From NCBI RefSeq assembly GCF_021028975.2, contig NC_059432.1, positions 68,386,001 to 68,450,000 on the forward strand: a DNA stretch of 64,000 bases, written 5' to 3'. Positions within the stretch are counted from its first letter, which is position 1; every line of letters starts with the position of its first letter. The DNA is from Sphaerodactylus townsendi (lineage: Eukaryota). The translations under genes were made by a program, and so were the position numbers. The notes under the pieces are model-generated. The model had not been told where the DNA came from. It was given only the letters and a program-made list of their open reading frames with translations, and ran no database searches. Below are positions 19,201 through 43,169 of the stretch, piece after piece.

Positions 19201-22200
19201 TCGGACGGATTCGGACGAGCAGGAGCCGAATCTGAGCTGTCCGAATCCTAACAGATCCGAATCCATGGGATTCGGATTACCAGCCGAATTGCGTTTTTAT
19301 TTTTTGGTGTTTTTTTCACATTTCGGCCTGCAGGGGAGACATTTTTAAACATATCAGCACCAAATTTTCAGGGTATCATCAGGAGACTGATAGGGACACC
19401 CCAAAAGTGGTGTCCCTATCCCCCATTCTTTCCAATGGGAACTAAGGAGATGAGGGCTACCCTTTTCAGGGTCCATAACTTTGGCCCCCCTGAACCAAAC
19501 TGCACCAAACTTGGAGGGTATCATCAGGACAGTCTCCTGATGATACACTGAAATATTGGTACCGATACATCTACAAATGCACCCCCTGCAGGCACCCCCA
19601 GAAATTTGCACAAGATTCTTTGTTCTGCAGTGACTTAGCTGCATTGCTGTCAATAGGGAATTTCTGAGGGGGCTGTGGAGTGCATTTGTAGATGTATCTT
19701 CAGGAGAGTCTCTGGATGACACCATCCAGGTTTGGGGAACTTTACTTCCAGGTGGAAGTGGGAGATGGCCCCACCCCTTTGGGTCCCATAGAATTAAACC
19801 CCTGAAGCAATTTCCCCAAACCCGGATGGTGTCATCCAGAGACTCTCCTGAAGATACCCTGAAAGTTTCCTAGATGGGAAACCCGATGTGGTAAAAAACT
19901 GGCTGGCCTATGAAAAAGCCCGGCGGAACAGGTCCATCTTGCAGGCCCTGTAGAAGCCACTTAGGTCCCTCAGGGCCCTAACCTTAGAAGGGAGCATGTT
20001 CCACCAGGTGGGGACCCAGACTGAAAAGGTCCTGGCCCTCATCGTGGCCAGCTGGATGGTTTTTGGGCCAGGGACTACTAGAAGATTCTCCTCTGAGGAG
20101 CCTGCTTGTGTGCTATTTGCTGTGTGCTGGAGGAGAATGTCCATCGCAACCAGGTTTCTCTTACAGAGGTATTTCCTCTAGCCCCACTTTCACTTTCCAC
20201 TCTCTGGGGCAATCAGACCCACTTACAGCATGATTATAATTTTGCTTTGCTGCAAGAGCAGGACAGCTTTGCCCTGGATCTCTTCTCTCCACCTGCAGCC
20301 AGCTTACCTAGTCTTACCCCCCCGGCGCTGCTTTGCACGCTTTCCCCTTGCCCTCCTCCCTGTTGCCAACTACTTATTGCTTCTTATCCTGCCGTATAAT
20401 TTCTATTGCCCATGGTCTCCCCACTCCTGCATATCTTTAGATTTTAAAAAATCAGAAAACTATATCGATAGATTGATTAATCAATACTGACACTTAAAAT
20501 ATGTAAAAAATAAGACTAGTTGACCAGTCCAAACGCCCGATTTGCCTCTGCATTTTATCAACAGCCTCGTAGTTTTATACACAAGTAATCAGTGATTCCA
20601 GACCACACTGGGAAAAGCCCGTCAGTCTTGACGCTTGGGTTTACAGCACATCGGAAGACAGATGATCATGAACCTGCGGAACTAGCAAATGGCAGTTCAC
20701 ATTGTCCTTTGGGGGTTTTGCAGTTTGCATGCTGCCATTACTCCCTCGTCACTTCCCACCATAAAAGACAATCAGTGTTCAGGCAAAGTGTACAGATGCC
20801 GTACTCAAGACTTTTCTTTAATAATTTGCCTTTTCTATGTCAATGTGTCGATCTATTGATAGGTTGATAGAATGATATATTAATCTATTGATAATATTAA
20901 AAATAAAAATTAAAGACTCCATTAAAAATTAAAGAACACATGCATGATAGATATCCTTCAAAACATCCACACCACCACCACCCCTGCCTGGATGCAAGCA
21001 AAAAGCCACCTGGTGGGTAATGCCTGCCCCGCTGCAAACAGGGCAGTGGGTAATAATACCGAACGTGCCCTGAAACAAAGACTCCCCGGACAGTTTGAAG
21101 TCGCAGAAACCTGGCCGTGCGTAATCGGCCAATGTAACAGTTTTTATAAATGCATAATGGTAAAAGTGTGAACTTTTTACATGAAATATGAAATGCTCAA
21201 GCTTAAATGTTGAGCTTCAGCCTTTTAAATTTCTTAATATGAATTTTAGGCTTGTCAGGAAGCATTCCAATTTTGAACATACACACACCTGTACCTGACT
21301 TTTGCCATTAAAACTCCACTTTTTTCTTGTAAATATACATTTATTAAACAATTGTAAATGTATGATGTCAGTTGAGCTTTTTTATACATGCACATCTGCC
21401 ACACTAGTAAGAAGCCAGTCCTGGCCTAGTGTGGGTGGGGTGCTGGGCAGGTTGGCTTGGTTGTATATCTTGGCTGCTGACACAAAGGCTGTTGAAAGCA
21501 CATCCCGTGGTTGTTCATACACAAAGAGTCTTTGTACCTCTTATGAGATGAGTGAGGATCTCTGCCTTGACTTCTCTGCAGGTCGACTGGTGCTGTCTCG
21601 GTGTGGGACTCTCCTTGCCAGCGTTGGTGCTGCATGCCACTCTGAGAGGGGTGATGAGTAAGGAAGCGTATTGGTGAAACTGGGTATACTGGATTGGAGG
21701 GAAGAAGCCAAGACTGCAGAGGAAAGGATATAGAAACGTCGAAAACAATTTCTCGGTTTAGAACTGCAGCCTCAGATTTATAAATGACTAATGCTGTTGA
21801 GAATATCCCCAAAATAGCAACATGTAATTCTGTTGTGTGGGACCTGACTGTATTAATTATTTAATTGTGTTATTGGATTTGTACCTTGCCCTTTCCTGAT
21901 GGAAGATAGGCTCAGGGCAGATAACAATGTGAAAATAACAGTCATTTAAAATACCCAATACATTAAAAAAAAACCTCACATCAATTAAAATACCCATTGG
22001 CGCTCCAGAAATACTCAACAATTTCCTGGAATGACCAACCAAGGAGGAATGAACAAAAGGAATGAGTAAAACCCAATCAAAGCAAAACAGCTAAGAAAAT
22101 AAAGATAAATAACAATAGAGGCAGGGAGGCAGCAAAGATTTGACTGTCACTGTCTCAACCAGAAGCTTGGTGGAACATGTCTGTCTTACAAGCTCAGTAG

Positions 22201-24918: not shown

Positions 24919-25294
24919 GTCAGATTCTCACAGGGCCAGACCGTGTGCATGAGAGGCTGGGAGTTTTGTCAGTGACTTTCTAGGTTTTGTTTTCTTCTAA
25001 AAATCAGCCACGTGAAGCCCCAGTTGTGTCAGGGCACCGTGAGGAGGGGGCACTGTGGTGTCAGTCGGCACCAGGGTCCCATTTGCCTACTGTTTAAAAG
25101 TGGGGAAAAACTATTCAAAAACTCATTTACAGAGTTCCCAGCATCTTATGTAGGTTTATTTATTTTATTTATTTATTGTTTCGTCTTATATACCGCCCGA
25201 TCCCCGAAGGGTTGACTCCTAGTTACCCAGAGAGAAAAGACTTTGCCCATTGGAATCACTAAGTGAGCTTACCCAGCCTCAGGCTGCCATGGTT

Positions 25295-26735
25295 TGTTTA
25301 TTTATTTATTAATCACATTTCTTAATCGTCCCTCCCAAACTGGCTCGGGGCAATTTACAACAGGAATAAATACAGTAAAAATTGACTCAGAAGTGAAAAC
25401 CCGTAACTTAAAATCGAGTGCAGTGACTAATTCTACTAACTAAAATTTAGATAAATTCAGTTAAATTAGAGTCTAATTAAAATTCATGCATGTAGGAGAA
25501 CAACTCCAGAGCTGTCCATCTGCAGAGAGAGGTGGTGCACAACCATAGGGGATGGGTGGTAATGTTAGGTCAGGCCTTCGCAAAATACTTGGCGGAACAG
25601 CTCCATTTTACAGGCTCTGCAGAACTCCATAATGTCCCGTAGGACCCTGATCTCCTCTGGTAGGCTGTTCCACCGAGTTGGGGCCAGAACTGAAAAAGCA
25701 TTGAGGTCAGTTGGACCTCGCGTGGGCCAGGGATTGTTAAAAGCCCTTTTGATCCAGATCTTTATGTCTGCTGGGGGTTATAATGGAAGAAGCGGTCACA
25801 CAAGTATCCTGGGCCCAGACTATGAATGGCTTTGAACTTCTTTTTCCAAACTGGTTTCCTGCATGTGCAGGATCAGTTTTCTAACTGTCTCTTCCAAAGG
25901 TCACGATTTTGTGCGTCTTCTGGGGTAAGGTTCTTTGCCTGCAGGTCTTCATTGATTGTGTCCCTCCATCGTTTTTTGGGTCTTCCACGTGGGCGGCATC
26001 CACCAGGCTCAAGGTGCAGGCTGTCTTTGCTACAGATGTTTCCTCGCGGTGCATGACATGGCCATACCACCTTAGCCGTGCCTGCCTCGTGTACTGGTCA
26101 ATTGGTGTTATTTTAAGTCTTTGCCGCATGTCATCATTCGGCACATGGTCGAACAGCGTCAGGTTTAGCATCCATCGAAGCATCCTCATTTCCATGACAT
26201 GAAGGGCTTGTTCATGTTTTCTTGTTGCTGGCCAGCATTCGGCTCCGTGCACTGCTATTGGGCTTTGAATGTCAACATTAAAACCTTGAACCTGATCCTG
26301 CTCCCAACTGGTAACGAATTCAGTTCACAAAGCACCAGTGTCACATGTGTACGCCATGGGGACCCAGAGAATATCCGGGCAGCTGCATTTTGAACCAACT
26401 GAAGTTTCCAGATCAATCTCAAGGGCAGCGCAGTGTAAAGCGCATTGCAGTAGTCCAATCTGGAGGTGACTGTTGCATGGATCACTGTAGCTAGGTTGGA
26501 GGACAATAAGTAGGAGGCGAGTTACTGCACCTGGCGCAGATTTTAAAAAATGCCAGCTGGCCCATCTTGGTGATCTGGGTCTCTGTGGACAACGAGGAGT
26601 CCGAAATCACCCCAGGTTCTTGGCAGATGAAACAGGCTCTAAACGAACCCCATCAAGAGCCAGCCTCTGCTCAGCCGTCCCTCCGCCACCCAGCCACGGG
26701 ACCTCCGTCTTTCCTGACTTTGGACAGAATTAAGG
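25295..26735 (-). mobile_element. L2 LINE fragment downstream of the SCLY stop
   Basis: ORF2 motifs LATVIHATVTSRLDYCNALY..LP..LQLVQNAAAR, RIRFKVL; the frame resumes as FKAIHSLGPGYL after the RTE insertion. Confidence 0.9.
25837..26260 (-). mobile_element. RTE-clade LINE 3' fragment inserted into L2
   Basis: GAECW...EMRMLRW...RLRWYGHV..R and RPRGRPKKRWRD; 9-bp TSD GGCTTTGAA at 25828-25836 and 26261-26269. Confidence 0.9.
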
Positions 26736-28394
26736 ATAAACTACATTCCCATCTGTTTGTTGCTGTTGGAATTGTGCAGAACCACTACTAATAGTTCCGG
26801 TTAACAGTAGCAGATCCTCAATTTTTTTTCCTGGCCATCACTATGCCTACGGTTCCATTACGAAAGTATTGTGTGTGGTCTGGGAGCGTGTGGGTATTCT
26901 TTTGCAGTGACTTCTGCAATCACACCTGCAATTTTTTTACTACTTGTATTATGGAAATTGCTGTAAAGTATATCTCTGTATTTTCTGTTCACAATCCATT
27001 TTTCATACTGTTGCATACCCAGGGACTATTGGTTAAAGACAGTTGAAGATTGCCTTGTGAACGAGTCCAAAACATTCGGAACACATAGTGGGGTTTTCCT
27101 TTGTGTTTGGTTTCTATGCCGCAGCATTTCCAGGTGCTCGTGCTTGATCTATGTTTCAGACAGAGTCCCTTTTCATCTACCCCCATGCCTTTGTCTCCTT
27201 CAAGTCAGCAGACCCCTCCCCCCCAATCCCTTTTTTTTTACAAAGGCATGCAGAGCACAGTGTTCAGCTCACTGAACTAGGCTGTAGAATGGTAGGATAA
27301 ATAGTCACGAGCTGTCCTTGGGTTAAGCTGATTGGGGTAGGTGGTTCTGATTTCATCTGATTTGCTTCACTTCTCTGATGGGCCAGGCACTTATTCTCAG
27401 TCCTAATTTCCCTCATAGGATGGTTGTGAGGATAAAATGGAAGTGAATTACCCAAGCCACTTTGAGTCCTTATTCAGATGAAATGTTCTGTAAATGAAAA
27501 AATATGAAACATTCTCTCCCTTGGTAGAAGTTATTGGGACTTTTTATTTTCATTCTCTTATTTAGTGGGCTGTGAATTGGGCCCAGAGAAACAGGCATGT
27601 GTTTCTTGTGATGTCTGAGGCTATTGTTGCCAATGAAAGTCTTCCTGACACTCTTTCAGCATCATGCTTATCTGTCAGATGAGTTATCACTGTGGTAGAT
27701 ATTCCCATAGGATCATATTTCCAATTACTAAGAGGCAATTGCCGCTCTAGTCCCTCGTGTGTTGTTACAGTTTGTTCCAGGAGACCTTGGGCTCATCTTT
27801 CCCTTAGTGATCACCAAAGATTTGTTACCTACTAGGATCACAGGTGTTGACTGAGTTTCTTCGAGGCAAACATGAGCAGCACAAATGCTGTGGGAGGGAA
27901 GGGAATGGAGCAAGAGCAATGCGCAGAATTTCATGCACAATCAAGTCAAAGCTGTGGAAGCAGGGAACACTGGAGGAGAGGGCATGAGAGAAGGGACAGG
28001 AGAAAGGAGAGTTGGAGCAGCAGTTGCCAGCCTTTTCTTCAATGAGAAATGACACCAAGCGTTACAAAGCTTTTTTTTTCTGTTCTATAAGTAGAACATG
28101 GACTAGGAAGAGCACTAGCAAGGGAGCTATCACTAAGCAACATTGAGGGAAAAACCTATGAAATAAAGGCATTAAAATCCTATGAAAAACCTAGAATAGG
28201 TGTGTAGTGACAAGACAGGGAGGCTGAAATTGTCTTTTAGCCTCTATTTAGCTCTGTTAATGTTTGGTTATTGTTTGTGTGGAAGAGAAGTTGAAGGACA
28301 GTTGTGGGTAATATGAAAGAATGTTCCAACCAGGAGAAGTTTTGAAGTTGCTTTAAAACTAGATACACTTTGAAAGCCTCAAGTGAAACATTAG

Positions 28395-29112: not shown

Positions 29113-30504
29113 AAATAAAAGCAACTAGCACAAGACTTGAGTTCTGTTTTGTGGTAGTGGCAAATTCTTTCATAAACGTCTTGATCCAGGGTATCTAAGT
29201 ATTAACTGGGATATATTGATGTGTATGATTTCAGTTAAAACCAATTTATTTCTCTTTTTAAAATTCTTTTTTTCCTAAGGAAAACCCTGAGTGGCATACC
29301 CGTTCCCCTTTATCTGCATAAGAACCCAATGAGGTTGGGTAAACTACATTGGTAACAAGCACATTTTGCCATGATTTGAAACTGGATTTCCACAGTTTAA
29401 TCAACTAGTCCCCTCAGCATGTTGGGTGTCTGTGTACTTGCCCTTGTGATACTCACTTAACCTATTATGACTCCCTTGTATATTTTTGCACACCTCAGCT
29501 TATGACCACATGATTTCAGTTGTCATCCATAGTTGCTTTCCCATTCAGAATAGCTGCTTTGACTTTGTGAATACTACAGTACAGCAACTCTACAGCTACT
29601 GTTACTATTTCTGCTTAATGGTTACTATGCTTGTCACAGCTTTGGGGCTTTGTTATACCCAGTTTACATAAATCAGCCATTCACTGGTGAAAATGTGTTC
29701 CTTTCTTTATGGGTATCAAATTCCCTGGTGATCTGTGGAATGGTATGAACTAATAGCCATATTGATCATATGGCAGTAATGGGGAGCAGGGCAGGGGCAA
29801 AATTATTCTTTTCCTCTTCACACTGTAGCTATCTGACCCATAAGGCTGTTGTTCACACATGTCCCTCAACTCTGGATGAAACTTTCTCAGGAAGGAAAGG
29901 GCAGAAAATATCCTGCTGTTCTTATACCTTCCTCTTGCTGTTCACAGGATCTTGCCCAATATTTGCAGTAGTTATTGGATGTTATAAATATTCTGCCATT
30001 CAGAAATTTAAAGTGTCCATAAAAACCACTGTTAAGACTAATTTTTTAAAAAAACAAGCATAATGTTTTGTTGGCTATGGCCTGTTCAGATACCAGAACA
30101 GTAACATTAGAAACAAGCAAAACTTGAAGGGAACTGTGGTGATTCATTAACCACCACCACCACCACCCCTCGCAACTCCCCCAAAATTGTTCACTACTTA
30201 ATTGATTGTATTAATTGAACGTATTAATTGATTGTAATAAAAAGTATGACATTACTGTTGCTTGCTTTTATTTTTCTCTAATATGACAACATAGGTATTT
30301 AGGTAATAGGTGTCTATTATCTGGAAAAAAAATAAAATTCAGCAATTCAAAAGATAGATCCTAGATCAGGAGAAAGAGGGCCTTCTGCCGCCTCACAGTG
30401 GTACTTTGCTTATGGGTGTTGTGCTCTCTTACCACTAGTAAATGTTGTTCAGTTTGGCTTTTATTGATTTTTTTTTACGTAGTGTACCATCTAAAATCAA
30501 TTCC

Positions 30505-31478: not shown

Positions 31479-32228
31479 CAGGTGCACTCTAATCTCTCTG
31501 AGGAAGATTTCTGCAAAACTCAAAAGCGTGCTTATTACTTTGTAACAATTTAGCTGGTTCTGTTAGAAGGTATGACACTGCTGTACAACTTGGCTACAAC
31601 AAGGTGACAACAGTCAATAGATTGTTTAAAAACTTTAAAGAGTTATTTCCCTACATAGAAAAAGACCCAGAATATGCATTCATATCAAAAGTTGGGCATT
31701 CTTGCTTCAGAATGAGAAACATGCTAAGTAGGCAGGAGATGACAGTTATGGGGGTTGGCTGCCTTTCTGGTGTGGCTTGCTTAACTGCAGAAGTACGTAT
31801 CTTTTGATATAATATAATTAGACATGTCAGTCAGTGAGTGACTCTAGACTTCAATGCTTCCCTTTTGAGTCCTAACTTTAGATCTGTTTGCCCCATACCC
31901 ATTCCTCCCTGAACTGAGCCTCTACCATCAGACTCCATGTAAGCTCATGGAGACTAGATAGCTTGCTGGATCTGCTGAGACAGCAGACACTGTCTTCAGC
32001 AGGAGTTAAAAGCTAGAATGAGAGCCTGACTTTCTACCATGGTGCAGAAGGAATCAAATCTATGTCCTTCCTGCCTTTACAGCTATGTTTGGTTTCCTGT
32101 TAGTAGAGTGGAAAATGTTCACCTAAGTTCCTGGCTGAGGGTGACTGAGCAAGCATGTTGCAGAGCCTTTTGGCTGTCTCTGCCTGTTAGGACATGGATA
32201 CCAGAAGGCAATTAGCAGCAGGCAAGTG

Positions 32229-33485
32229 ATGGTGAGATAAGAAAGGTCCAGAGGAGTCCAGAGGGCAATCGTGGTCAAGAATGTGCAGCTAGGTTTCCAT
32301 TTGTTTTTGTGGCCGATGTTCTTCTGCCATAAGAGGGCAAGCAGAAGTACAGTGGGGCATTGGAGTGGCACTGCAGTGAAATCCTAAACAAGCACTCAGG
32401 TTTCACTGAACAAAGCATAGTAAATCTTTACCACAGCCAGAGATTTGGAATAAGGCCTTCTGAAACCAGAGCCTTCTGTCACCACTCAGTTTACCATTGA
32501 AATATTAATGGAACAAAAAAAAATTCCTTCTGGAACACTCGATATTGGTTAAATAAAACAGCATGGTTCATGTGTGAGGCTGAACACAAGAGTTCTCTCT
32601 GGGTCACTGTAGCTCACATATTGTGTGCTGATACTGTTGGTGGGGGACAAATGGAAGCAATGTATTCAGTCATTGATGAACATACAGTAATCAGATTTGG
32701 TGATGCTTTTAGTTGGAGTTTGAAAGAAAAATTTACAGTATGATTTTTTCTTCACAAATCTGAGAAAATGAGTTGTGGCTCTGAAAAGTTCATATTGAAA
32801 TAAATGTTATTAATCCTTAAAGTGCCATGGGATTAAAAAAAAAATTTTTTTTGCTATGACAGACTAACAGAACCCCTTGGTCAATGTCTCTGCATGCCAA
32901 GAGCCTCTAAAGGGCTTTAAAGAGTCCACAACTCAGTGGGGCTGACATGGGTTCCTCACAGGGATGCAATGACATTGGTGTTTCTGCCTCCTCATTTTAG
33001 CGTCAAGGTCTGGGTCATGGAACAGAACAGGCTAGATGAGCATCTGTTGACTACTTATATAGCCTGTACTGAACAGCATAGAGTTTTAGGCCTAGGTTTG
33101 ATTAGGTCACAGATATTTTGATAGACTTTAGAACAGAATGGACTAGCAGATAGCTGATATGTGTATAGGCTTGTGGAAATTTGCATATTTAGCAAAGGCT
33201 CATAATGCTGCATTTGGACATTTTAAAAAATCTCCTTTCCCAAGAGTTGAACTCTTGATGCCTAACTCTCCTTATCCTTCCAATTCTCAGTTACAAACTA
33301 CCCCTTTTTTCCAGTCAGCTTCCAACTGAAACTCCTTCACTCCCAGACTAAATCTCTCTTCTATTGTCTTCCTTCCCCTTAATTGCTGTCAGCCTCTCAT
33401 CAACATTCTGCCATCTCTCATTGGTTGCACTCTGGGGGAGGCGGGACAGGACCTGTCTGTCACAATGACAGTTTTTGCTGTGAGT
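32229..33485 (+). pseudogene. ESPNL: Decayed remnants of ESPNL ankyrin-repeat exons 1-5
   Basis: Ordered fragments VQRAI / RGQ-EC / FVADVLLP-KRA (32256-32339); TA-RFG, ETR..HH, L-ILM (32433-32510); ACQE, SGADM, DAMTL, HFSVKVW (32892-33013); AG|VTDI, LLM (33106-33260); CCQPLINILPSL, DLS (33384-33479), with many indels and stops. Confidence 0.7.
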
Positions 33486-33531
33486 ATTAATTTTATCTTC
33501 AGGAAAATGAGAGATTTTTATATCTGTTCAG

Positions 33532-33644
33532 TTAACCTGAGTCCAGCAGATGCTCTTCAGGAAGGCCATGCTGTCACATCTGATATGTCCGCTTCCATCA
33601 ATATTACATTAGGTGGCATTGACATGGCACAGCCTGCTTTAATG
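33532..33644 (+). CDS. ESPNL: Putative ESPNL exon 7 (open; in-frame ATGs at 33507, 33585, 33624)
   Basis: CAG acceptor; NLSPA resembles human SLSPA; 113 nt ending in phase 0, which fits exon 8; donor GTTAAC is weak. Confidence 0.5.
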
Positions 33645-33809
33645 GTTAACAAAGTGGTACTCAGTGACTCAGATGAATATGGGTACAGCTTGAGAAAGTA
33701 GAAAGCATTTATTTTCTCATGGGCCACTAAATGAAGGGAAGCCACAAGCGTAGAAGTGATCAGATATCAGCTTATGACTTGTGTATCTGTGCAGAGCTGT
33801 AGTTTGATA

Positions 33810-34220
33810 ACATTCATTAGCTGTCCATGCCCTGCAGGACCTTGGTGAGTTCCGCAGGGCCTGTAAGATGGAGCTATTCCACCGGGTCTTTGGAGGGGCT
33901 GGCCGCGGTCTTACCGCCCCCCCACTGACACTGAGGCTGCCTGTTTTTTCCATCTTGGTTGGGCCCTGATTCCATCTTGGGCCCTGCCTACTCCCCCCCC
34001 CTTTTTTTGGCCTTCAGATTGGGCGCCTGTTTTTAAACAACTTCTGTTGTTTTAATTTATATTTAATGTTAGTAACTGCTGCTTAAGTTTTTAATGGGTT
34101 TAAGTTTTATGCTGTATTGATTTGCTGTCTCAGAGAACAGCCATGTTGTGAGCCGCCTCGAGCCCTTTGGGGGTGAGGCGGCCTATACATTTAACAAACA
34201 AACAAACAAACAAATAAATA
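33810..34220 (+). mobile_element. L2 LINE 3' end
   Basis: ALQDLGEFRRACKMELFHRVF C-terminus, 3' stem GAGCCGCCTC...GAGGCGGC and a (CAAA)n tail. Confidence 0.75.
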
Positions 34221-35084
34221 TAGATTCAATGTACACAGACTAAAATGGTTATTTTTTGTTTCCAAGCCCAACAAGGGTCTTATCCTCTCTCTGTTAGCTC
34301 AGTTGGACAAGATGTGTGATCAGATCTCTGGATGTCTCTTAGGGCCTAAGAGTCCAACCTAAGGGTCCAGCTGAGCTAACAAAGGAAAGAAAGGATTTCT
34401 TATTTTATCTCCATGTAATCCTCCCTTATAGTTAGTAAACTCATTTATAAAAAGCAACTGAAAAATTCTGTCCTATTCTACTTTGCCAATATATGTAATA
34501 CACCCAACAAATACACCCAGGCATCACACAAAAGACAGGGGGTGGAAGGGATCACCACCATTACATTCCCTGAGTGACATCATTGGGGTAAATCTCTAGC
34601 TCTCAGCTTAACCTACTTCACAAGCATGTTGTGAAGTTACATAACCTCTGGCTAATAGTTGGGACTGGCAGATCAAGAATCAATATCTGCCTTTTCCCAA
34701 ATGATAAAAATTTGCACCAACAGTGAAATGTTTAGTTCAGTTTGGTCGCTGCATCTTAAGATGGGGATACAGAAATGTAAGGAGGAAATCATGTTTAAAG
34801 GTAAGTGCTCTATTAAGGTCCAAGCATCAAATTAAGGGAACTAAAATGAAGATCCATGTTTGGTGACTGATCCACTGCTGTGGACACATTAGAGCTCAAT
34901 ACAGTATTTTAGAGCAGTGCGGTTGGTGTGACCTACTAGTTGGATTTAAACTGGTAGATGATGGGAAGGGGGATCATTAAATATTTTTAGATGTTTTAAT
35001 TTAATGTTAACAACACATTTTGAATTTGCGACTTTTTTATTTTCATTCACTTCAAGGGTCTGGGACTACCTTGTACAAACAGGG

Positions 35085-35183
35085 TGTTTGTTGTGAGGGG
35101 GGAGGGAAAGGAGATTGTAAGCCCCTTTGAGTCTCCTACAGGAGAGAAAGGGGGGATATAAATCCAAACTCTTCTTCTTCTTC
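35085..35183 (+). mobile_element. Squam3 SINE 3' fragment
   Basis: Same 3' end and (CTT)n tail as the copy at 31.2 kb. Confidence 0.7.
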
Positions 35184-36389
35184 TACTTGAAATAAAATAA
35201 ATATATGCTTAGGAAACAAAGAAGTTTCTTCTGAAATAATACTTGAACATCTAATTTCTTTGAACATTCTTAGTAGGCAAGTGACAGTGAGGATCTCCCT
35301 GACCCCAACTAATTGCTCTGAGTTCATTCGTCTCATGACTCACGGTTTTATTCTAACCCCTTAGTTGAATTACACTGTGGTAACTTATACCTGCCAATCC
35401 ATTATATCCATATATAATGAATGTATGGAGGATACTCTGATGAAAGAAGTTGTTCATGTATGTAAATCTTTGCTGAGGAATCTGGGAGAGGGTAGGAAGC
35501 AACTACATTAGCCTTGAGTGCCTGGGAAGATGGAGGATGTCTCAGACAGTCCCTGGGACTCATCCTGCTAGCCTCTAGATCTGCACTGGCCATGAAGCTA
35601 GAACATCTGAACTAAGACACTGAGAAGAATCTTATTGTTTGGTCTCTGCTAAATCCAGCTGAACACTCGCCCTTTGGAAAAAAGTCCTAGATTTTAGGAA
35701 AGGAACTGAAAAAGAAGAAAGGTGAAGACAGTTTGGGAAGCAGAGAAATCCAGATGTATCCTGCCTTCTGCCGCTAAAAAAGCTCCTGCCTCTCTGCATA
35801 TCCCTGCCATCTGATGCCCAACCTTCAAATATTAATGTAATGCTAATTGTGACTCCCTGACCTCCACTCTTTCTCCTGGCATTTGCCACACAATGCAGTC
35901 TCTACCTTCCTCTAGACGGGACTGAGGTCTCTAGTTTCTGTGCTGTTGAAGACTAATTATTCACTGGTCAGTGAAATTCTGACCTTCTTAAGGACCAGAT
36001 CTAATCACAGCAGTATTTGTTCATCTTCTATGTTGTGTTCTAAATGGGCCTGCAAGACACAGGGCCGGCATGATTGGTATGTACCTTTTTAATAATTTCA
36101 TAATTTCTGTTGACATTTTTCCTGAGCAGGGCTGTAGCTCACAGAGAGCATGGAGCCTCCTGCTGGTGATGGTGGGGCTACCATCTTTTTGTGAATTCCA
36201 TCTCTACTGTAAGACTAAAAATGTACTGTCTCATTCTCAATATGCAAGCACCATTCAAAATGTGTCAGTGTCTTGAATTCTGATCTTTTCAGAATAATTA
36301 CTTTTGAGTTTATTCTCTGGCATGCAAATTGTCTCGCTGAATTAGAATTTTCCAAGTTTAGAATCTGTATTTCTACTGCTTGGACCAGT

Positions 36390-36575
36390 AGACCAATCTT
36401 GTCAGATCTCAGAAGCTAAGTAGGATTGGCCCTGGATAGCATTTGTATGGGAAACCACCAAGGAAGTCTAGGGTTGCTACATAGAGGCACACAAAGGCAA
36501 ACCACTTCCGAAACTCTCTTGCCTTGAGAACCCTCTGAGATCACCATACATTGTGACTTGATGGCACTTTATATA
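36390..36575 (+). mobile_element. 5S-rRNA-derived SINE
   Basis: TCTTGTCAGATCTCAGAAGCTAAG...GGGAAACCACC head followed by the family tail. Confidence 0.7.
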
Positions 36576-36949
36576 CACACACATCTTGGGCTAGGAGTAT
36601 TGCAGTTAATTGGTGGGATGAAAGTTACAGGCATGTTGTTGATTATTTGAGATTATTTTGCTTCGGATGCAATGTTGTAACAAGGAATGAAAAAGAAATT
36701 TCCAGGTAGTATTTCCTTTAAATAAGAATAGGCAGTTTTTGATTAGTAAATTGCTTGTTAGTATTTCCTTTTATATATCAAAAAGACACCTGTCTAGAAG
36801 TTCTAGTGCTATATAAACACATTTCAGTTTAATGGTTAAAAAGTAGAGGATTAATCAACTAAACACTCTTTAACTGGATGACAGTCCTTCAGTGTTCAAT
36901 AGCACTATCTGCACACACATCACCCCCACCCCACCCCATTTAAGGGCCA

Positions 36950-38437
36950 GAATGATCAGACTCTGGGTCTGGGTCTGTATAGTGTCTGTGAATAGACCTG
37001 TGGTGTTGGCAGGGAGAGAGTATTGGGGGGAAAGGACCATACTCTAGCCATAGAGGAGAATTATCTTTTAGGGAGAGAAGAATTCCTAGCCCAGGTACTA
37101 ATAACAGCTAATTCTTCTTTTGGACAGAGCAGGTAGAACTGAGGGAACTAAGTGAAAGTCTGGATCAGAGAGGGACAGTTCTCAGGTCAGGAAGGAAATC
37201 TTACACTGTGTGTGTGAGAAGAATCTCCATCCCTAGTTCTAAGAAGGAATTACTTCAAACATTGTGAAGTGATCCAAAAGTTCAGGGAAGTTAGAAGGGT
37301 TGACACTCTTTTTGATATAGTTTACAGGCACCAGAGTTAACATGTGAATCTCTAGATATAAGCTCAAGACAAAGCTGTGTAACATCTAGAAGTCTACTGT
37401 ATTTCAAAAACTCTGAGCAACAGAAATCAAATCAAACAGCAAAACACCATCTGAGCTGTACTTCAAGAGCATCTTCATATCTGTACATAAAACTGTACAG
37501 ATCTTTCCTTCATATCTGTACATAAAACTGTACAGATCTTTCCTTTCTGTCTTATCCTATTCCCAAAAGATGTTTAATAAAATTCTATTATTTTATTTAT
37601 TGAACTTTTTTAAAAAAAGAAAAAAAGCCTCTAGCTCTGTTATCTGAGGTAAAACAGAATGAGTGGAGTGGGAGCACCTAAGTTCCCTAAACTGGTTCAG
37701 ATATACCGTAGGTTTATTTTAAAGAAGTACAGAATGAGACAATATGGAGAAGACCTCCAGAAATTTACATTCATAGACGCATATTTAATAAAAATTCTAC
37801 TACTTTATTCGTCAAAAAAAATTTACAAGACAGAAAAAAGGCCTCCAACTATTGGCTAAAACAGCAGAGTTTGCCCAGGAATGGAAGCGTAACATTGAGT
37901 GCAGTAAAAATCAGACCTCCCAAAAAGTAAATTGCAAAAAGGTAAAACTTACATTTATTTAAGTAGATTCTGTTCACATTCCTGTTGCAGTTGAAAGAGA
38001 GCTAGAAATCCTAATCTAAAGAATATACTTCCCTATACAAGTGGGCAGCTATTTCCGGCATTACGTGAGTGCTGAGTGTGAGTATGGAATATTTGCTTCT
38101 ACAGGAGAGACCTGTAGAAGCATCTGACTCCATGCAGATGCTTGTGGAAAGTGAGACAAAGGCTACTGAGAGAGAAGAAAGAGAGGTCAGAGGTCAACTC
38201 TCAGGTACAGGCAAAGAGAGGACATCTCACCAAGAGATAACATGTATACAGCACCCCCCAATGTCCAGGCATGCTGAGTTGCTCTCACTCCAACACTAGC
38301 ATGGTTATTATCTAAGGTAAAATGGAGTGAGTGAAAGGGATGGAGACCACCTCAGTTCCCCAAACTGCTTCAGATATGCATTTGTTTTAAAGAAGTACAA
38401 GGTGGGACAATCTGGGGGAGACACCCAAAAGGTTACA
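36950..38437 (+). mobile_element. Two related LTR-like fragments
   Basis: Diverged ~130-bp direct repeat (about 37638-37770 and 38306-38437), both ending TTACA; AATAAA near 37576; 5' limit uncertain. Confidence 0.45.
37473..37542. repeat. Perfect 35-bp tandem duplication
   Basis: CTTCATATCTGTACATAAAACTGTACAGATCTTTC x2. Confidence 0.95.
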
Positions 38438-38455
38438 TCCATGCATAAATACTCA

Positions 38456-39011
38456 TCTCTCTATATAAAAAGCTAACAGTGACTTTGTTAGTCACTCCCT
38501 AACGCCGAAACGGCTGGACGGATCGCCCCCAAATTTTCACATGACGTTCCTCCCTGTTGTGGGCAGGTAATCGGACCTTCAAATTGCTGAAAGTCCATAC
38601 CTGAGCCAGGTAAAATGTCTTTTTCCTGGCGCACCAGGCCATGAAGCTTATGTGTTTAACTGTCACCCTTAGAATGTTCGTGCAGCCTGTCTGTCTGTGG
38701 CCTGAGGGCTTGGTATGAGGGCTTAGAATGTTCGCGCAGATGGGCAGAGATGAGCATTGAAGACAGCAAATAGGTAACACTGTTAGGTAATATGACTGGA
38801 AGTGAAACACATACAAACTTTGCCGTGTGAGACACCAGGTGGGGTTTCCCCCCTCACACGCAGGTAACTTTCACTCTCTGTGCCTCACCCACTGCTACCA
38901 CATAACACACATACTTTCATACACATCCAGCTCATCCTCACACACCTCACTCTGCCCTCCCTCACATCCAACCACCACTTACCCACTTCCTCACCCATAT
39001 TCGCCACAGCT
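38456..39011 (+). mobile_element. Non-autonomous Helitron, 3' end truncated or altered
   Basis: Inserted after A; starts TCTCTCTATATAAAAAG; contains GAAACGGCTGGACGGATC..CCAAATT; ends TTCGCCACAGC; no TIR or TSD. Confidence 0.65.
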
Positions 39012-40231
39012 CTCTTTTACTAAAAGGGAGCTAGAGTTTGCCTTTTTCTTCTAAGAATATCTGCAGGGTGGGGGCAAACCAACACTACTGGCTCCGCTTC
39101 TTTTGCACATGGCCCTTTAAGAACCCAGGGAGCTGGCCTTGATCTGAACGCCTCACCACCCTGTGGCTGGAATCTTCAGAGGTGTATCACAAAGAGAAGT
39201 CTGCCAGCATGATACAGCTGTGAGCCAATCAAGAATATGTCAAGAATATTTAGTGTCATGGGGTGACATTCAAATTTGTTTTATTTTACTAATAAACAGG
39301 TCATTAAAATTTTAGTGGGTCACGAAGGAGAGGTATTAAAATAACCGGGCCATGGGGAAAAAAGTTTGGGAAATGCTGCTCTAGCACTTTGGACATTTGA
39401 GATGGTTATTAAATTAGACTCAGCAGCAACAATTTCTTAAACATAATTGTCATGCATTACTGATTTTGAGACTTTGAGCCATATTTATAGGTGGTGTCTT
39501 AAAGTTCATCCTGGTGTAATTCCCATGTATCATTAAGCCATTTTGATGTACTTATATAAAATGTTTCCCAGTTAAAATGGTTAATAGTGTGGATGTCTAC
39601 ATTTTTTTACATTGGCTCATTAAAGTGAGAAAATTCACCCATAGAACAGGAATGTTTAGGATTACCCATGAAAGACACTAGCATTTGTTAAGGTTTCAAC
39701 ATGGAACTTTGGGTTAGTAAGCCATGCTGACTCTTGATTAAAGACAAAGGCAGTTTAAAATGCAATTTAAATTAACAAATAAATGTATATTTGTCTTTTA
39801 TTCCAGCTCCAAAGATCTCTACCATACTGAAAGTGCATGAATCCAAGAAATCGGTAGCTGAACAAAAGATCAATAAATCTCTTCAGAAGGCCAAGATAAC
39901 AGCATTGTTTTCAAACTCTGTAGGTTGGACAGCAATAATTAATGTTTCTCTATTATCTGTACTTTTCTTATTCTGTGATCTCCCCCAGGGGATCTTGTCT
40001 CTCCACATCCATTCTAAGAATTATTTCACTAACTTCTATTACGTTAGACCTGGTCATTTATCTGACCTAGGGACCAAACTAATATCTACAGCAGTAGCCT
40101 CAACTTCTGCTCTTGGTAGCCCCCCTTTGATTGCTTTGGGCTGCAGTTTAATGGTTTGAGGGGAAGTCCTAGCATATCCTTCTTTAAACTGAGGTAAAGG
40201 CCCTTTACAAATACAGCCATCTTCCGTGCAG

Positions 40232-40429
40232 GATGAAAAGAGAGAGCAATCAGAAGCCACCGTACCAAGCACTCTCCTCATAATGCTGGATGAGGTGGGA
40301 GCCTCAGACATTGATGCCCTTGTGCCTACCCACGATGAGCGAGGATGTTCCATCCCAGAGTGGAAGCGGCAGGTGATGGTGAGGAAGTTGCAAGCCCAGC
40401 TGACATCTGAAGAAGGAATGAGCAGGAAG
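40232..40429 (+). CDS. ESPNL: ESPNL exon 8
   Basis: [32 protein letters not shown] (espin-family motif); 198 nt; AG/GT; phase 0-0. Confidence 0.93.
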
Positions 40430-41591
40430 GTACTATACTGAGTTAACAGTAGGAAAAAGTATCACTGCACTGCCTTTCCTATACTGCCTGACTTCCCAAC
40501 AGCTGCTTATTTGACTTCATATGTTTTTAAAATTAAAATTCCAGTAACTCCATTTTGACTGTTTCATTCCATGTGCCTGTGTAATGGAAACCCTTTTCTT
40601 GATTTTAATGCAATAGCACCCATAAATCTACCCTGTTACTGTAAGAACAGATTGACAAAGCATGTATGCAGTGTTTACGTTTGTTTTTGCTTTTTTGTAC
40701 ATGTGTCTTGCTCAATAACCAAGGGTAGACAGAGGATTTATAGAGCCCTGGGCAATATCCCAAAACCAGCCCAGCTAGGTAGAGTAGGTAGAGTCAACAG
40801 AAAATGTTCTAGCTATTCCAATCTAGAGTGCAATCAGAATTGCAGAAACAGATCTGGGTTTTGCTGAAGAAAGTAAAGCACACCAAGTTTCAGACAAATT
40901 AAGTCATATATATGGAAAAGAGAAGTTGCAGGGCCAGAGTGGCAGTGTGTGTGTGTGGGAGAGAGAGATCTCTGTAATGTCTGTGCTTGTGTAGAGATGC
41001 TATGGAGAGAAAAGGGGGAGAGGCAGAAGAGGAAGCAATGGCAGCAGTGAGCAGTATGGAGACATTCCCATCTTCTCCCAGACTCACGGCTGCTTCCATG
41101 TCACCCACGTAGAATTCAACCTTAGTTGTCCTAATTTGAATCATGCCATCGTAAATCCCCTCCCCTCCCTCCCTCCCTCCCTCCAAAGATGGGACATACT
41201 TATGTCATGCTGAGTTATACCCATGTGGCCATATTTAGAAGTGGAAACCATGCCACAGATGATGTATATAAATTAGGCTTTCCTGCAGGGTAACATTTGA
41301 TTAGTTTGGGTAGATGCAGTTCCTTAAACATGATTGTGTGTAGGGTCTCTTAAATATCATCCACATGTAGATATGAAGATATGTAGTCCTTTGATAGAGA
41401 TTGTTTTTTATTATTATTAGATGGTGCTTCTACCAGTGATTTGGAGTTGATGACACATAAGATGATTTCTAATTCTATATTTATCAGATTACTTGTTTGA
41501 CTACTAATTTGGAGACCATTGGGGGAAGGGACTTGAACTTATCTTGTCACAATTCTGAATCACATCTTCCTTGCTTTCTTTCCTTATCCAG

Positions 41592-43169
41592 AACAAGGAA
41601 GGCTGTGCTCTGGACCAAGATGATTGGCAGTATTCCCAGGCACACAATGCCATCCTGGGTCCCTATGGGGAGCTCCTGACTGAGGATGACCTTCTGTATT
41701 TAGAAAAGCAGATTGAGAAACTGCAGATAAGGAAGAGGTGCCAGGAGTATGAGAGTGAGCTAGGACACCTGACAGAGGAACTGCAGACAGTTCTCCCATC
41801 TCCCATTGTCAATATCACAGTCAACACTCAGTTTCTGCAGGAAGGATCTAAGGACAACATCCAGGAGCTCCCTGCCTGGTGCAGCCAGATGTCTGGCGTG
41901 GTGAAAAGCATGTCTCTCTTGCTCAACAACATCGGTGGAATGAAAAAAGAGGAGACTGAGACACCAGCTCCAAAGGTTCATCCTATGTCAAGAAAGGCTG
42001 ATGTTATTTCTGGAGGGTCTGCCAGGAGAGAGATCCTGGAATGTGGTGTTTCGGTAAAAAAGCTAAGGGGCAGTTTTGAGAAAAAAGCTCTCTTGGGACA
42101 AGACAAAACCTTTGAACTCCAACGATTGAAAGGCATGCCCTGGGAACATGGGACAGGTAAGGAGAAAAACCAACCAATATTATCATACATTTGTGAGGGC
42201 AAGAAGAAATGTCTTTGTAAGAACGACGGGTTTGGAGATGTGGAGAATGCCAGTGATTCTGGCATCAGCTGTGAGGAATCCACTTCTGAGATGACTGGCT
42301 CTCCTGTCTCCATAGCAGAGTCTAGCATACTCCGAAAGGAACGTATTGTGCTGCTTTTTTTAAGTCACTGGAAGAAATCTGCCTACACTCCGTCCATGAA
42401 GCTCATGGCTAGGAAGACTGTTAAATCCTCAACCCCTGTGAAGATGGGTCTGGTAGAGGTTATGGCAGACGTTAAAAAACAGCAAGCTCCTATGCAAAAA
42501 CCGTTGGTGGAAATGAGCAAGCTTGGTCATTTAGTTCGACAGAGATATGCTATCAAAAATCTAATTGATTGCTGGAAGGGCATAATCTCTCTTGTACCCT
42601 CTCAGCAGATCAGCCGCCTCAAGCACCAGCGGCACACGGTGTATTCCCCAGAACAATTTCTCCCATACGTGAATGGTAAGCCTGTTGATTACAACAGCTT
42701 AACCCTTGACCTGTTTATGCTGGGCTATTTCCACATCCTAGAGTTGGACCTCTCCCCAGAAGAACGGAAGAGAAGGCATCTGCTTTGCTTTGAAGTCTTT
42801 GACCACTTGGGAAGGTATCAATGGGAAACAGTGCGTGCCTTTCACAAAGCAGTGATTGATGAGATAGCTGCAGGCAAAAGAGGCTGGAAAGATTGCTTTG
42901 AGGACATTAAGACAAGGTTTTTCGGTAACCCAGCCAATAACAAGGAACTCAAAACATCATCTGTTGAAACAAATCTGAAATCAGCATCCAGCAATAGGGT
43001 CCAGAGTGTGGTTCTTGAGCAAGGAGATAATGTTCCATGGAAATACTTTGAGCTGGGAAGCTTCAGTAATGATGAAATCTGCAGATACATTGCAAGGAGC
43101 TTTGCCTTCTGGAAAGAAAAAGAAGCAGAGATGTTCAGTTTTGAGGATTCAGGCCATCCTTTACATTAG
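41592..43169 (+). CDS. ESPNL: ESPNL terminal exon 9 (525 aa + stop), C-terminal region
   Basis: WQYSQAHNAILGPYGELLTEDDLLYLEKQI, SDSGISCEE, LRKERIVLLFLSHWKKSAY, LTLDLFMLGYFHILE, RHLLCFEVFDHLG, RSFAFWKEKEAE; no disruptions. Confidence 0.95.
   Translation, partial: NKEGCALDQDDWQYSQAHNAILGPYGELLTEDDLLYLEKQIEKLQIRKRCQEYESELGHLTEELQTVLPSPIVNITVNTQFLQEGSKDNIQELPAWCSQMSGVVKSMSLLLNNIGGMKKEETETPAPKVHPMSRKADVISGGSARREILECGVSVKKLRGSFEKKALLGQDKTFELQRLKGMPWEHGTGKEKNQPILSYICEGKKKCLCKNDGFGDVENASDSGISCEESTSEMTGSPVSIAESSILRKERIVLLFLSHWKKSAYTPSMKLMARKTVKSSTPVKMGLVEVMADVKKQQAPMQKPLVEMSKLGHLVRQRYAIKNLIDCWKGIISLVPSQQISRLKHQRHTVYSPEQFLPYVNGKPVDYNSLTLDLFMLGYFHILELDLSPEERKRRHLLCFEVFDHLGRYQWETVRAFHKAVIDEIAAGKRGWKDCFEDIKTRFFGNPANNKELKTSSVETNLKSASSNRVQSVVLEQGDNVPWKYFELGSFSNDEICRYIARSFAFWKEKEAEMFSFEDSGHPLH

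What the first reader, a model, noticed from the sequence alone, without database searches (positions are those of the whole stretch)
32229..43169. ESPNL appears to have lost its ankyrin-repeat half while keeping an intact C-terminal half
Seen: no intact ankyrin exon lies between the SCLY stop (24918) and ESPNL exon 8 (40232), and this interval has no assembly gap. Instead, 32.2-33.5 kb holds ordered, frameshifted peptide remnants that match ESPNL exons 1-5 as I recall the human protein: FVADVLLP-KRA ~ FLVQRAQLPGNQRA; A-RFG and ETR..HH ~ AARFG and ETREGARPLHH; ACQE, SGADM, DAMTL, HFSVKVW ~ ACQEG, CGADV, DGMSAL, HYSLVVW; AG|VTDI ~ VTFTDI; CCQPLINILPSL ~ CCQTLVSHHVDPSL. The proline-rich exon 6 is not visible. 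Exons 8 (198 nt) and 9 (1578 nt) have no stop or frameshift. Established: ESPNL is a hair-cell stereocilia protein, and the ankyrin domain of espin-family proteins binds the myosin-III tail for transport to the tips. Inference: this contrast in decay implies old loss of the motor-binding domain with continued selection on a ~600 aa ankyrin-less protein, which may be uncoupled from myosin III or used in another tissue.
Basis: partly seen in the sequence, partly recalled or inferred. Interest (0 to 1): 0.85.

Follow-up and report, generated by a model that had tools for sequence, protein, structure and literature searches.

The report
Gecko ESPNL gene missing its ankyrin half
In the dwarf gecko Sphaerodactylus townsendi the hearing-related gene ESPNL has lost, by clean deletions, all exons for the domain that docks it onto myosin-III motors, while the actin-binding C-terminal half stays intact and under selection; colubroid snakes show the same loss independently.

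Summary
The window is Sphaerodactylus townsendi, SCLY-ESPNL-KLHL30. The core observation holds. No ankyrin exon lies anywhere in the 64 kb, there is no gap between SCLY and ESPNL, and exons 8 (40232-40429) and 9 (41592-43169) are open.

The claimed decayed remnants of exons 1-5 at 32.2-33.5 kb are not real. That stretch is orthologous to intron 5 of Gekko and Paroedura, and its peptide matches score no better than control introns.

The ankyrin exons were removed, not decayed:
- exons 1-2 are missing between 25120 and 26829;
- exons 3-5 are missing at a sharp junction at 29727/29728;
- exons 6a/6b should lie where 36954-39389 holds 2.4 kb of unrelated sequence.

Euleptes, of the same family, has a full 1025-aa ESPNL, so the loss arose within Sphaerodactylidae. 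On the S. townsendi branch omega is 0.40: below 1 (p=2e-4) and above the background of 0.23 (p=0.02). Both published actin-binding elements are kept.

Colubroid snakes lost the ankyrin half independently and keep the rest (omega 0.48, below 1).

This is a new variant of a known kind, of moderate interest.

The parts
24616..24918 (+). Last coding exon of SCLY (stop at 24918). It is the upstream anchor of synteny.
   Evidence: Collinear blastn to the Gekko L001 and Paroedura L002 SCLY 3' ends. Aminotran_5 genes are called upstream of ESPNL in L001, L002, L004, L006 and L008.
25121..26828 (.). Lesion 1. This 1.7 kb with repeat fragments stands where Gekko has 9.9 kb (L001 5174-15094) and Paroedura 8.4 kb (L002 4310-12718) holding ESPNL exons 1 and 2.
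   Evidence: Gap in the collinear blastn chains to both geckos. The only similarity is to a dispersed repeat in reverse orientation. No exon 1/2 relic by tblastn or blastn.
29700..29763 (.). Lesion 2. The deletion junction is at 29727/29728. The left flank equals Gekko L001 up to 20108 and the right flank equals L001 27630 onward, so about 7.5 kb with exons 3, 4 and 5 is missing.
   Evidence: Base-level comparison of the junction. The same gap is seen against Paroedura: window 29408-29796 against L002 15610-23581.
31498..33529 (+). Orthologous intron 5 sequence.
   Evidence: Collinear alignment at 72-76% identity to intron sequence downstream of exon 5 in Gekko and Paroedura. Peptide matches are at chance level.
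36954..39389 (.). Lesion 3. This 2.4 kb has no similarity to either gecko, at the place where exons 6a and 6b lie in Paroedura (L002 31728-31847, 32956-33045) and exon 6b in Gekko (L001 43713-43817).
   Evidence: Gekko and Paroedura align to each other across this interval, but the window aligns to neither. No exon 6 hit by tblastn or blastn. It holds an internal 135-bp direct repeat and no Pfam hit on its ORFs.
39807..39919 (+). ESPNL exon 7 (113 nt, phase-1 start, no in-frame ATG). It is intact, with an AG acceptor and a GTAGGT donor identical to Gekko and Paroedura.
   Evidence: It is 81-87% aa identical to Gekko and Paroedura. Pairwise dN/dS is 0.28-0.36, like Gekko-Paroedura at 0.35, but 37 codons give low power.
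40232..40429 (+). ESPNL exon 8 (198 nt). The public model starts at Met 40283. Positions 40307-40402 encode [32 protein letters not shown], identical in Gekko, which is probably the 27-residue actin-binding region shared with ESPN.
   Evidence: The region is described in PMC4773517; equating it with this block is inference.
41592..43169 (+). ESPNL exon 9 (1578 nt with the stop): the ESPNL C-terminal domain, open throughout.
   Evidence: 100% identical to P0001 and 84-85% to Gekko and Euleptes. All vertebrate-invariant blocks are kept.
42054..42080 (+). [quoted passage not shown]
   Evidence: Translation. The motif and its in-vitro actin binding, with apparent Kd of about 6 uM, are in PMC13364712 and its supplement.

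Best explanation
This is the true orthologue of ESPNL in Sphaerodactylus townsendi, truncated at the DNA level.

Two sharp deletions removed exons 1-2 and 3-5, which encode the whole ankyrin-repeat domain. A third lesion, a deletion plus 2.4 kb of unrelated sequence, removed exons 6a/6b. Exons 7, 8 and 9 remain with intact splice sites and reading frame.

Shown: the loss happened inside Sphaerodactylidae, after the split from Euleptes. Since that split the remaining coding sequence has evolved about 2.7 times faster at the protein level than in Euleptes. It is still under purifying selection, with omega about 0.4.

Inferred: the locus now makes only an ankyrin-less protein of at least 574 aa. 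This protein keeps both F-actin-binding elements, the exon 8 block shared with ESPN and the SFM in exon 9, plus the conserved C-terminal domain. It therefore still binds actin filaments. It cannot dock on the THDI tail of myosin IIIa/IIIb, so it cannot ride to stereocilia tips as a motor cargo or help MYO3B move. In this it is functionally analogous to the short, ankyrin-less isoforms of espin.

Not shown: transcription, which must start from a promoter downstream of the deletions, possibly in or near the new 2.4-kb segment.
For: - Identity and synteny.
- Absence of ankyrin exons with positive controls.
- The three lesions are defined against two independent gecko loci, one of them gapless.
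- The ankyrin exons of Gekko have ordinary GC content (0.47-0.55), so dropout in sequencing is not expected.
- Euleptes (Sphaerodactylidae) has a full-length gene. It is sister to S. townsendi in the protein tree, with branch lengths 0.045 against 0.12.
- Codon maximum likelihood on 548 codons and 7 taxa gives omega 0.40 for S. townsendi. Omega=1 is rejected (p=2e-4) and omega equal to the background 0.23 is rejected (p=0.024). The 6-taxon run agrees.
- Neutral-decay simulation with the local indel:substitution ratio of 0.2: P(ORF open) is 0.026 at 0.01 substitutions per site and 0.0005 at 0.02.
- Both actin-binding elements are conserved.
- The ankyrin domain is the myosin-III THDI binding site: PMC4773517.
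- Independent precedent: snakes lack exons 2-5 and carry only a frameshifted exon 1 relic. They keep the C-terminal half at omega 0.48, below 1 (p=4e-4), within the snake crown.
Against:
- The base assembly is linked-read (Supernova) with nanopore gap filling, so local misassembly cannot be formally excluded.
- The age of the deletions is unknown, and the branch-wide omega mixes time before and after the loss.
- Exon 7 starts in phase 1 and has no ATG, so the real 5' exon and start codon are unknown.
- The rest of the genome could not be searched for relocated ankyrin exons.
- The structure model of the retained protein is poor (mean pLDDT 48) and gives no functional clue.
Confidence: 0.75

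Rival explanations
1. Recently dead gene. The deletions killed ESPNL as a whole, and exons 7-9 are an unexpressed relic that has not yet had time to pick up a stop or frameshift.
For: - No promoter, first exon or RNA evidence for a short transcript was obtained.
- Exon 7 has no start codon.
- Omega on the S. townsendi branch is raised, 0.40 against 0.23.
Against: - Explaining the raised omega by a neutral phase needs about 22% of the branch, roughly 0.04 substitutions per site. The simulated chance of a still-open ORF is then below 0.001.
- Three separate lesions in the 5' half contrast with none in 1.9 kb of 3' exons. All vertebrate-invariant residues are kept.
- Splice sites of exons 7-9 are intact.
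- Snakes show that the ankyrin-less half can persist under selection.
Confidence: 0.09
2. Assembly artefact. The ankyrin exons exist in the animal, but the linked-read assembly collapsed or skipped the segments that carry them.
For: - The base assembly was Supernova linked reads, gap-filled with nanopore reads and re-scaffolded.
- No reads could be laid on the junctions.
Against: - Three separate losses all have clean collinear flanks and no N run in 24-44 kb.
- Each missing segment is several kilobases of ordinary GC content, 0.43, with exons at 0.47-0.55.
- NCBI's own annotation of this genome yields only the 574-aa product, and no S. townsendi protein appears among the ankyrin-domain hits of 508-1615 aa.
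- The C-terminal half shows the relaxed omega expected of a real change.
Confidence: 0.07
3. One reading: the ankyrin exons decayed in place and survive as frameshifted peptide relics at 32.2-33.5 kb.
For: The best tblastn segments are 18-20 bits.
Against: - The region is orthologous to intron 5 in two geckos that carry their real exons elsewhere.
- Its scores lie inside the range of 16 control windows, 15-22 bits.
- No nucleotide relic of any ankyrin exon is found.
Confidence: 0.02
4. Split or relocated gene. The ankyrin exons moved elsewhere in the genome and still work, alone or with the C-terminal half through a distant first exon.
For: Nothing positive. The rest of the genome could not be searched, and proteins shorter than 508 aa were outside the search range.
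Against: - Deletion junctions are simple, with no sign of inversion or translocation breakpoints.
- No ankyrin-domain hit on either strand of the 64-kb window.
- No S. townsendi ESPNL-like ankyrin protein among the best hits.
Confidence: 0.03

Closest known systems
Full-length ESPNL (espin-like), a myosin-III cargo of hair-cell stereocilia (Ebrahim et al. 2016, PMC4773517)
   Same: - Orthologous locus between SCLY and KLHL30.
- Exons 7-9, the exon 8 actin-binding block, the SFM motif and the C-terminal domain are all conserved (84-85% aa identity to Gekko and Euleptes).
   Different: - It lacks residues corresponding to 1-334, the ankyrin-repeat domain that binds MYO3A/B THDI, and the linker exons 6a/6b.
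- It cannot be a myosin-III cargo by the known mechanism.
Short espin isoforms (ESPN splice/promoter forms without the ankyrin domain; ESPN-1 is the only ankyrin-bearing form)
   Same: An actin-binding C-terminal protein made without the ankyrin domain. This is the best functional analogy for what the gecko locus can still encode.
   Different: - In ESPN the short forms coexist with the long form and arise from internal promoters or splicing. Here the long form is abolished in the DNA.
- ESPNL binds actin but does not bundle it (PMC4773517).
- An internal ESPNL promoter is not demonstrated.
ESPNL of colubroid snakes (Protobothrops, Thamnophis, Notechis, Pituophis models of 634-686 aa)
   Same: The ankyrin exons are lost while exons 8-9 are kept under relaxed purifying selection (omega 0.48). 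The SFM and the exon 8 block are kept.
   Different: - It is an independent event: Anguimorpha and Iguania have full-length genes, as do other geckos.
- Snakes retain a frameshifted exon 1 relic and exon 6a, but show no exon 7. S. townsendi has no exon 1 relic, lacks exon 6 and keeps exon 7.
Unitary pseudogene left by segmental deletion in squamates (general phenomenon, e.g. PMC13005343)
   Same: Multi-kilobase deletions removed coding exons.
   Different: The remaining 1.9 kb of coding sequence is open, keeps its splice sites and has omega significantly below 1.

Membership tests
ESPNL orthologue | Position between SCLY and KLHL30 on the same strand | tested here: met
   Collinear blastn to the Gekko and Paroedura loci, whose called genes are Aminotran_5 (SCLY), ESPNL and BTB-Kelch (KLHL30).
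ESPNL orthologue | ESPNL-specific C-terminal domain (large last exon) | tested here: met
   Exon 9 is 100% identical to the S. townsendi 'espin-like' model. It is 84-85% identical to Gekko and Euleptes and 45-50% to fish and mammal ESPNL.
ESPNL orthologue | Actin-binding elements: the block shared with ESPN, and the SFM 9-mer | tested here: met
   The exon 8 block is invariant against Gekko. The SFM VKKLRGSFE keeps positions P1, P4, P8 and P9. Binding itself was not assayed.
ESPNL orthologue (full-length, myosin-III cargo) | N-terminal ankyrin-repeat domain that binds MYO3A/B THDI | tested here: not met
   No ankyrin exon in the window by tblastn with seven full-length queries or by blastn with single exons. 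No Pfam Ank hit in exons 8-9.
ESPNL orthologue (full-length, myosin-III cargo) | Presence in hair bundles and transport to tips | not testable with these tools
   No RNA or protein data could be reached.
Pseudogene | Stops, frameshifts or lost splice sites in the remaining exons | tested here: not met
   Exons 7, 8 and 9 are open and keep AG/GT sites.
Pseudogene | Neutral evolution (omega = 1) | tested here: not met
   Omega is 0.40 on the S. townsendi branch, and omega=1 is rejected at p=2e-4. The simulation argues against a long neutral phase. The branch includes time before the loss.
Short isoform from an internal promoter (espin-type) | A transcription start and start codon downstream of the ankyrin exons | not testable with these tools
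   - The public model starts at Met 40283 in exon 8.
- Exon 7 has no ATG and needs an upstream exon.
- Ankyrin-less models are annotated in many vertebrates, which is only suggestive.

The most novel reading that the evidence does not exclude
Loss of the myosin-III-docking ankyrin domain of ESPNL is recurrent in sauropsids. It is shown here for Sphaerodactylus and, independently, for colubroid snakes. It is possible in turtles and ratite birds, where only ankyrin-less models exist.

Each time, the actin-binding C-terminal half is kept under relaxed but real purifying selection. This would mean the C-terminal half has a function of its own that does not need myosin III. It would also mean the motor-coupled function is dispensable in lineages with reduced or low-frequency hearing, given that Espnl-null mice lose high-frequency hearing.
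Probability: 0.35. Interest if true: 0.7.

Novelty: new variant of a known kind. Interest (0 to 1): 0.55.

Why it matters
ESPNL is known only as a myosin-III cargo, and its large C-terminal domain has no assigned function. A natural allele that deletes the motor-binding domain but keeps the rest under selection is seen twice independently in squamates. That is a natural separation-of-function experiment, and it predicts a myosin-III-independent, actin-associated role for the C-terminal half.

It also supplies ready-made constructs and species for testing how espin-family cargos set stereocilia dimensions. And it offers a candidate molecular correlate of differences in reptile hearing.

For genome annotation, it shows that the 574-aa model is probably a real truncated gene rather than a partial prediction.

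Tried and rejected
- Pfam finds nothing in exons 7, 8 or 9, and no WH2 hit for exon 7. It finds nothing in ORFs of the lesion 1 and lesion 3 segments.
- The AlphaFold model of P0001 with a 30-sequence alignment is poor: mean pLDDT 48, with only residues 10-40, 60-110 and 410-500 moderately confident. The fold search gave only generic helical matches at Z<8. The Atlas feature search returned only ESPNL clusters.
- Distant CTD-like hits from the representative search carry no informative Pfam domains.
- Euleptes DNA is not on record, so the sister lineage entered only at the protein level.
- The turtle check failed its purpose. The Emys locus L007 begins inside intron 5, and Mauremys L005 has only 10 kb of upstream flank. 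Turtle loss of the ankyrin exons is therefore untested. The bird case was not examined; the emu model sits on a very long branch.
- Literature searches for ESPNL with gene loss, pseudogene or reptiles found no prior report.
- The scan's earlier notes hold nothing on ESPNL.
Searches used single-exon references or the public protein P0001. Exon sequences were concatenated only inside scripts for the codon statistics and the decay simulation.
- No N run was filled and no human contig was fetched or compared.


Full report
**Identity of the locus**

The long ORF at 41571-43169 has no Pfam domain. It is 100% identical to the public 574-aa 'espin-like protein [Sphaerodactylus townsendi]' (P0001) and 84-85% identical to Gekko ESPNL. 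That protein maps to exon 8 (from Met 40283 to 40429) and exon 9 (41592-43169).

SCLY lies upstream and KLHL30 downstream, as in every other sauropsid locus fetched. This is the ESPNL orthologue.

**Are the ankyrin exons absent?**

Full-length ESPNL proteins were run by tblastn against the whole window on both strands. The queries were Gekko japonicus (P0003), Varanus, two marsupials, a bichir, Euleptes, Paroedura, Podarcis and Anolis. Only exons 7-9 were hit.

The same queries find all five ankyrin exons in the Gekko locus L001 at E 1e-16 to 1e-50. Exon-by-exon blastn at word size 7 finds no relic of exons 1-6b between 24.5 and 40 kb. Exon 7, the positive control, scores E 2e-32.

The only N run in the window is at 14211-14425.

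**The claimed remnants**

The window was aligned to the complete SCLY-ESPNL-KLHL30 loci of Gekko japonicus (L001) and Paroedura picta (L002, gapless). Both alignments are collinear chains.

They align at 71-76% identity to intron sequence downstream of exon 5 in both geckos, and both geckos carry their true ankyrin exons far upstream of that intron.

The best plus-strand tblastn score of the ankyrin domain in 32229-33500 is 18-20 bits. Sixteen control intron windows of the same size give 15-22 bits.

**What really happened: three lesions, each seen against both geckos**

1. Between window 25120 and 26829, 1.7 kb with repeat fragments replaces 9.9 kb of Gekko and 8.4 kb of Paroedura. Those segments hold exons 1 and 2.
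2. At 29727/29728 the sequence jumps from Gekko L001 20108 to 27630. This removes 7.5 kb with exons 3, 4 and 5, and the junction can be read base by base.
3. Window 36954-39389 (2.4 kb) aligns to neither gecko, while the two geckos align to each other across the corresponding interval. That interval holds exons 6a/6b.

The missing segments have ordinary base composition.

**Exon 7**

It has the same AG acceptor and GTAGGT donor as in Gekko and Paroedura and is 81-87% identical in protein. It begins in phase 1 and has no in-frame ATG.

Its pairwise dN/dS of 0.28-0.36 is like that between the two full-length geckos, but 37 codons give little power.

**Timing**

A search with the Gekko ankyrin domain returns full-length ESPNL from 13 lizard species, tuatara and alligator. 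These include Euleptes europaea, which belongs to Sphaerodactylidae.

In a protein tree of the C-terminal half, S. townsendi and Euleptes are sisters, with branch lengths of 0.12 and 0.045. The loss is therefore younger than that split. The retained half has evolved about 2.7 times faster in S. townsendi.

**Selection**

I wrote a branch-model codon likelihood (GY94, F3x4) and ran it on exons 8+9 (548 codons). The taxa were S. townsendi, Gekko, Paroedura, Podarcis, Thamnophis, Protobothrops and Mauremys.

| Branch class | Omega | Test against omega=1 | Test against background |
|---|---|---|---|
| Background | 0.23 | - | - |
| S. townsendi | 0.40 | rejected, p=2e-4 | rejected, p=0.024 |
| Snake crown | 0.48 | rejected, p=4e-4 | rejected, p=7e-4 |

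These values are, and the 6-taxon run agrees.

The branch includes time before the loss, so I asked how long a neutral phase could be hidden. The local intron indel:substitution ratio is 0.20, and 15% of indels are multiples of three. Under those rates the simulated chance that the ORF stays open is 0.17 at 0.005, 0.026 at 0.01 and 0.0005 at 0.02 neutral substitutions per site.

The lineage dS is about 0.18. Explaining the raised omega by neutrality alone needs about 0.04 substitutions per site. Continued but relaxed purifying selection is the better reading.

**What the retained half contains**

Ebrahim et al. 2016 (PMC4773517) show three things. The ankyrin domain (mouse residues 1-334) binds THDI of MYO3A and MYO3B. 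ESPNL binds but does not bundle actin, through a 27-residue region shared with ESPN. Espnl-null mice have high-frequency hearing loss.

The exon 8 block [32 protein letters not shown] (40307-40402) is identical in S. townsendi and Gekko. I take it to be that shared region; this is inference.

[quoted passage not shown] The window encodes VKKLRGSFE at 42054-42080, with the key positions kept.

The product should therefore still bind actin filaments but cannot be a myosin-III cargo by the known route. The structure model is mostly low-confidence helices and coils and adds nothing.

**A parallel case**

No snake, turtle or bird appears among the ankyrin-domain hits, while ankyrin-less ESPNL models exist for four snakes, several turtles and three ratites.

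For the pit viper Protobothrops the whole gapless interval from SCLY to the ESPNL stop was fetched (L006). It holds only a frameshifted relic of exon 1, still alignable to the Podarcis start-codon region. Exons 2-5 are absent. Thamnophis is collinear with it as far as its locus reaches.

Anguimorph and iguanian lizards have the full gene, and so do other geckos. The snake and Sphaerodactylus losses are therefore independent.

For turtles the test failed: the Emys locus starts inside intron 5. The turtle and bird cases rest on annotation only.

**Limits**

- The assembly is linked-read based with nanopore gap filling.
- The rest of the genome could not be searched for relocated ankyrin exons.
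- The real transcription start and start codon are unknown.
Concatenation of exons was done only inside scripts for the statistics.
- No gap was filled and no human contig was used.

**Verdict**

This is a real, lineage-specific truncation of ESPNL by deletion, not decay in place. The actin-binding C-terminal half is retained under relaxed purifying selection, and snakes show an independent parallel. It is a new variant of a known gene family and of moderate interest. Its main value is as a natural separation-of-function allele.

Noticed in passing
L006 5283-5582 (Protobothrops mucrosquamatus) and L003 (Thamnophis elegans): Colubroid snakes carry a frameshifted relic of ESPNL exon 1 and lack exons 2-5. 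Their C-terminal exons stay open, with omega 0.48 within the snake crown and a very long snake stem branch (0.77 substitutions per codon). No exon 7 hit was found in Thamnophis.
   Followed up: partly
L007 (Emys orbicularis), L005 (Mauremys mutica); proteins P0008-P0011, P0025, P0029, P0030: Turtles and ratite birds have only ankyrin-less ESPNL models in the database, while alligator has a full one. The fetched turtle loci do not reach the place where the ankyrin exons would lie, so real loss is untested. The emu model sits on a very long branch with odd composition.
   Followed up: partly
window 36954-39389: This 2.4-kb S. townsendi-specific segment replaces the exon 6 region. It has a 135-bp internal direct repeat (37640-37774 / 38308-38442, 74% identity) and no similarity to any fetched locus. 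Its origin is unknown: a transposon or other insertion. It is a candidate source of a new promoter or first exon.
   Followed up: partly
window 40232-40285: In S. townsendi exon 8 begins GAT GAA, where other geckos have GGT GAA. This creates an out-of-frame ATG at 40233. Its short ORF ends in a TAA that overlaps the in-frame ATG of the public model (ATAATG at 40280-40285). It may be chance, or it may matter for translation start.
   Followed up: no
window 25590-26506, minus strand: Repeat-derived ORFs (123 and 83 aa, LINE-like by eye, no Pfam hit) lie in the segment that replaces exons 1-2. Similar copies occur at window 19922-20027 and in Gekko L001 14262-14747.
   Followed up: partly
L001 43713-43817 and 45633-45745 (Gekko japonicus): The public 923-aa Gekko japonicus ESPNL model omits exons 6b and 7, although both are present and open in its genome. 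The Euleptes model uses an earlier donor inside exon 7. These are annotation differences, not biology.
   Followed up: no
window 39390-39806: The 400 bp upstream of exon 7 is 82-85% identical to Gekko and Paroedura. This is slightly above the other alignable intron sequence (79-83%), so it may be a conserved regulatory element.
   Followed up: no
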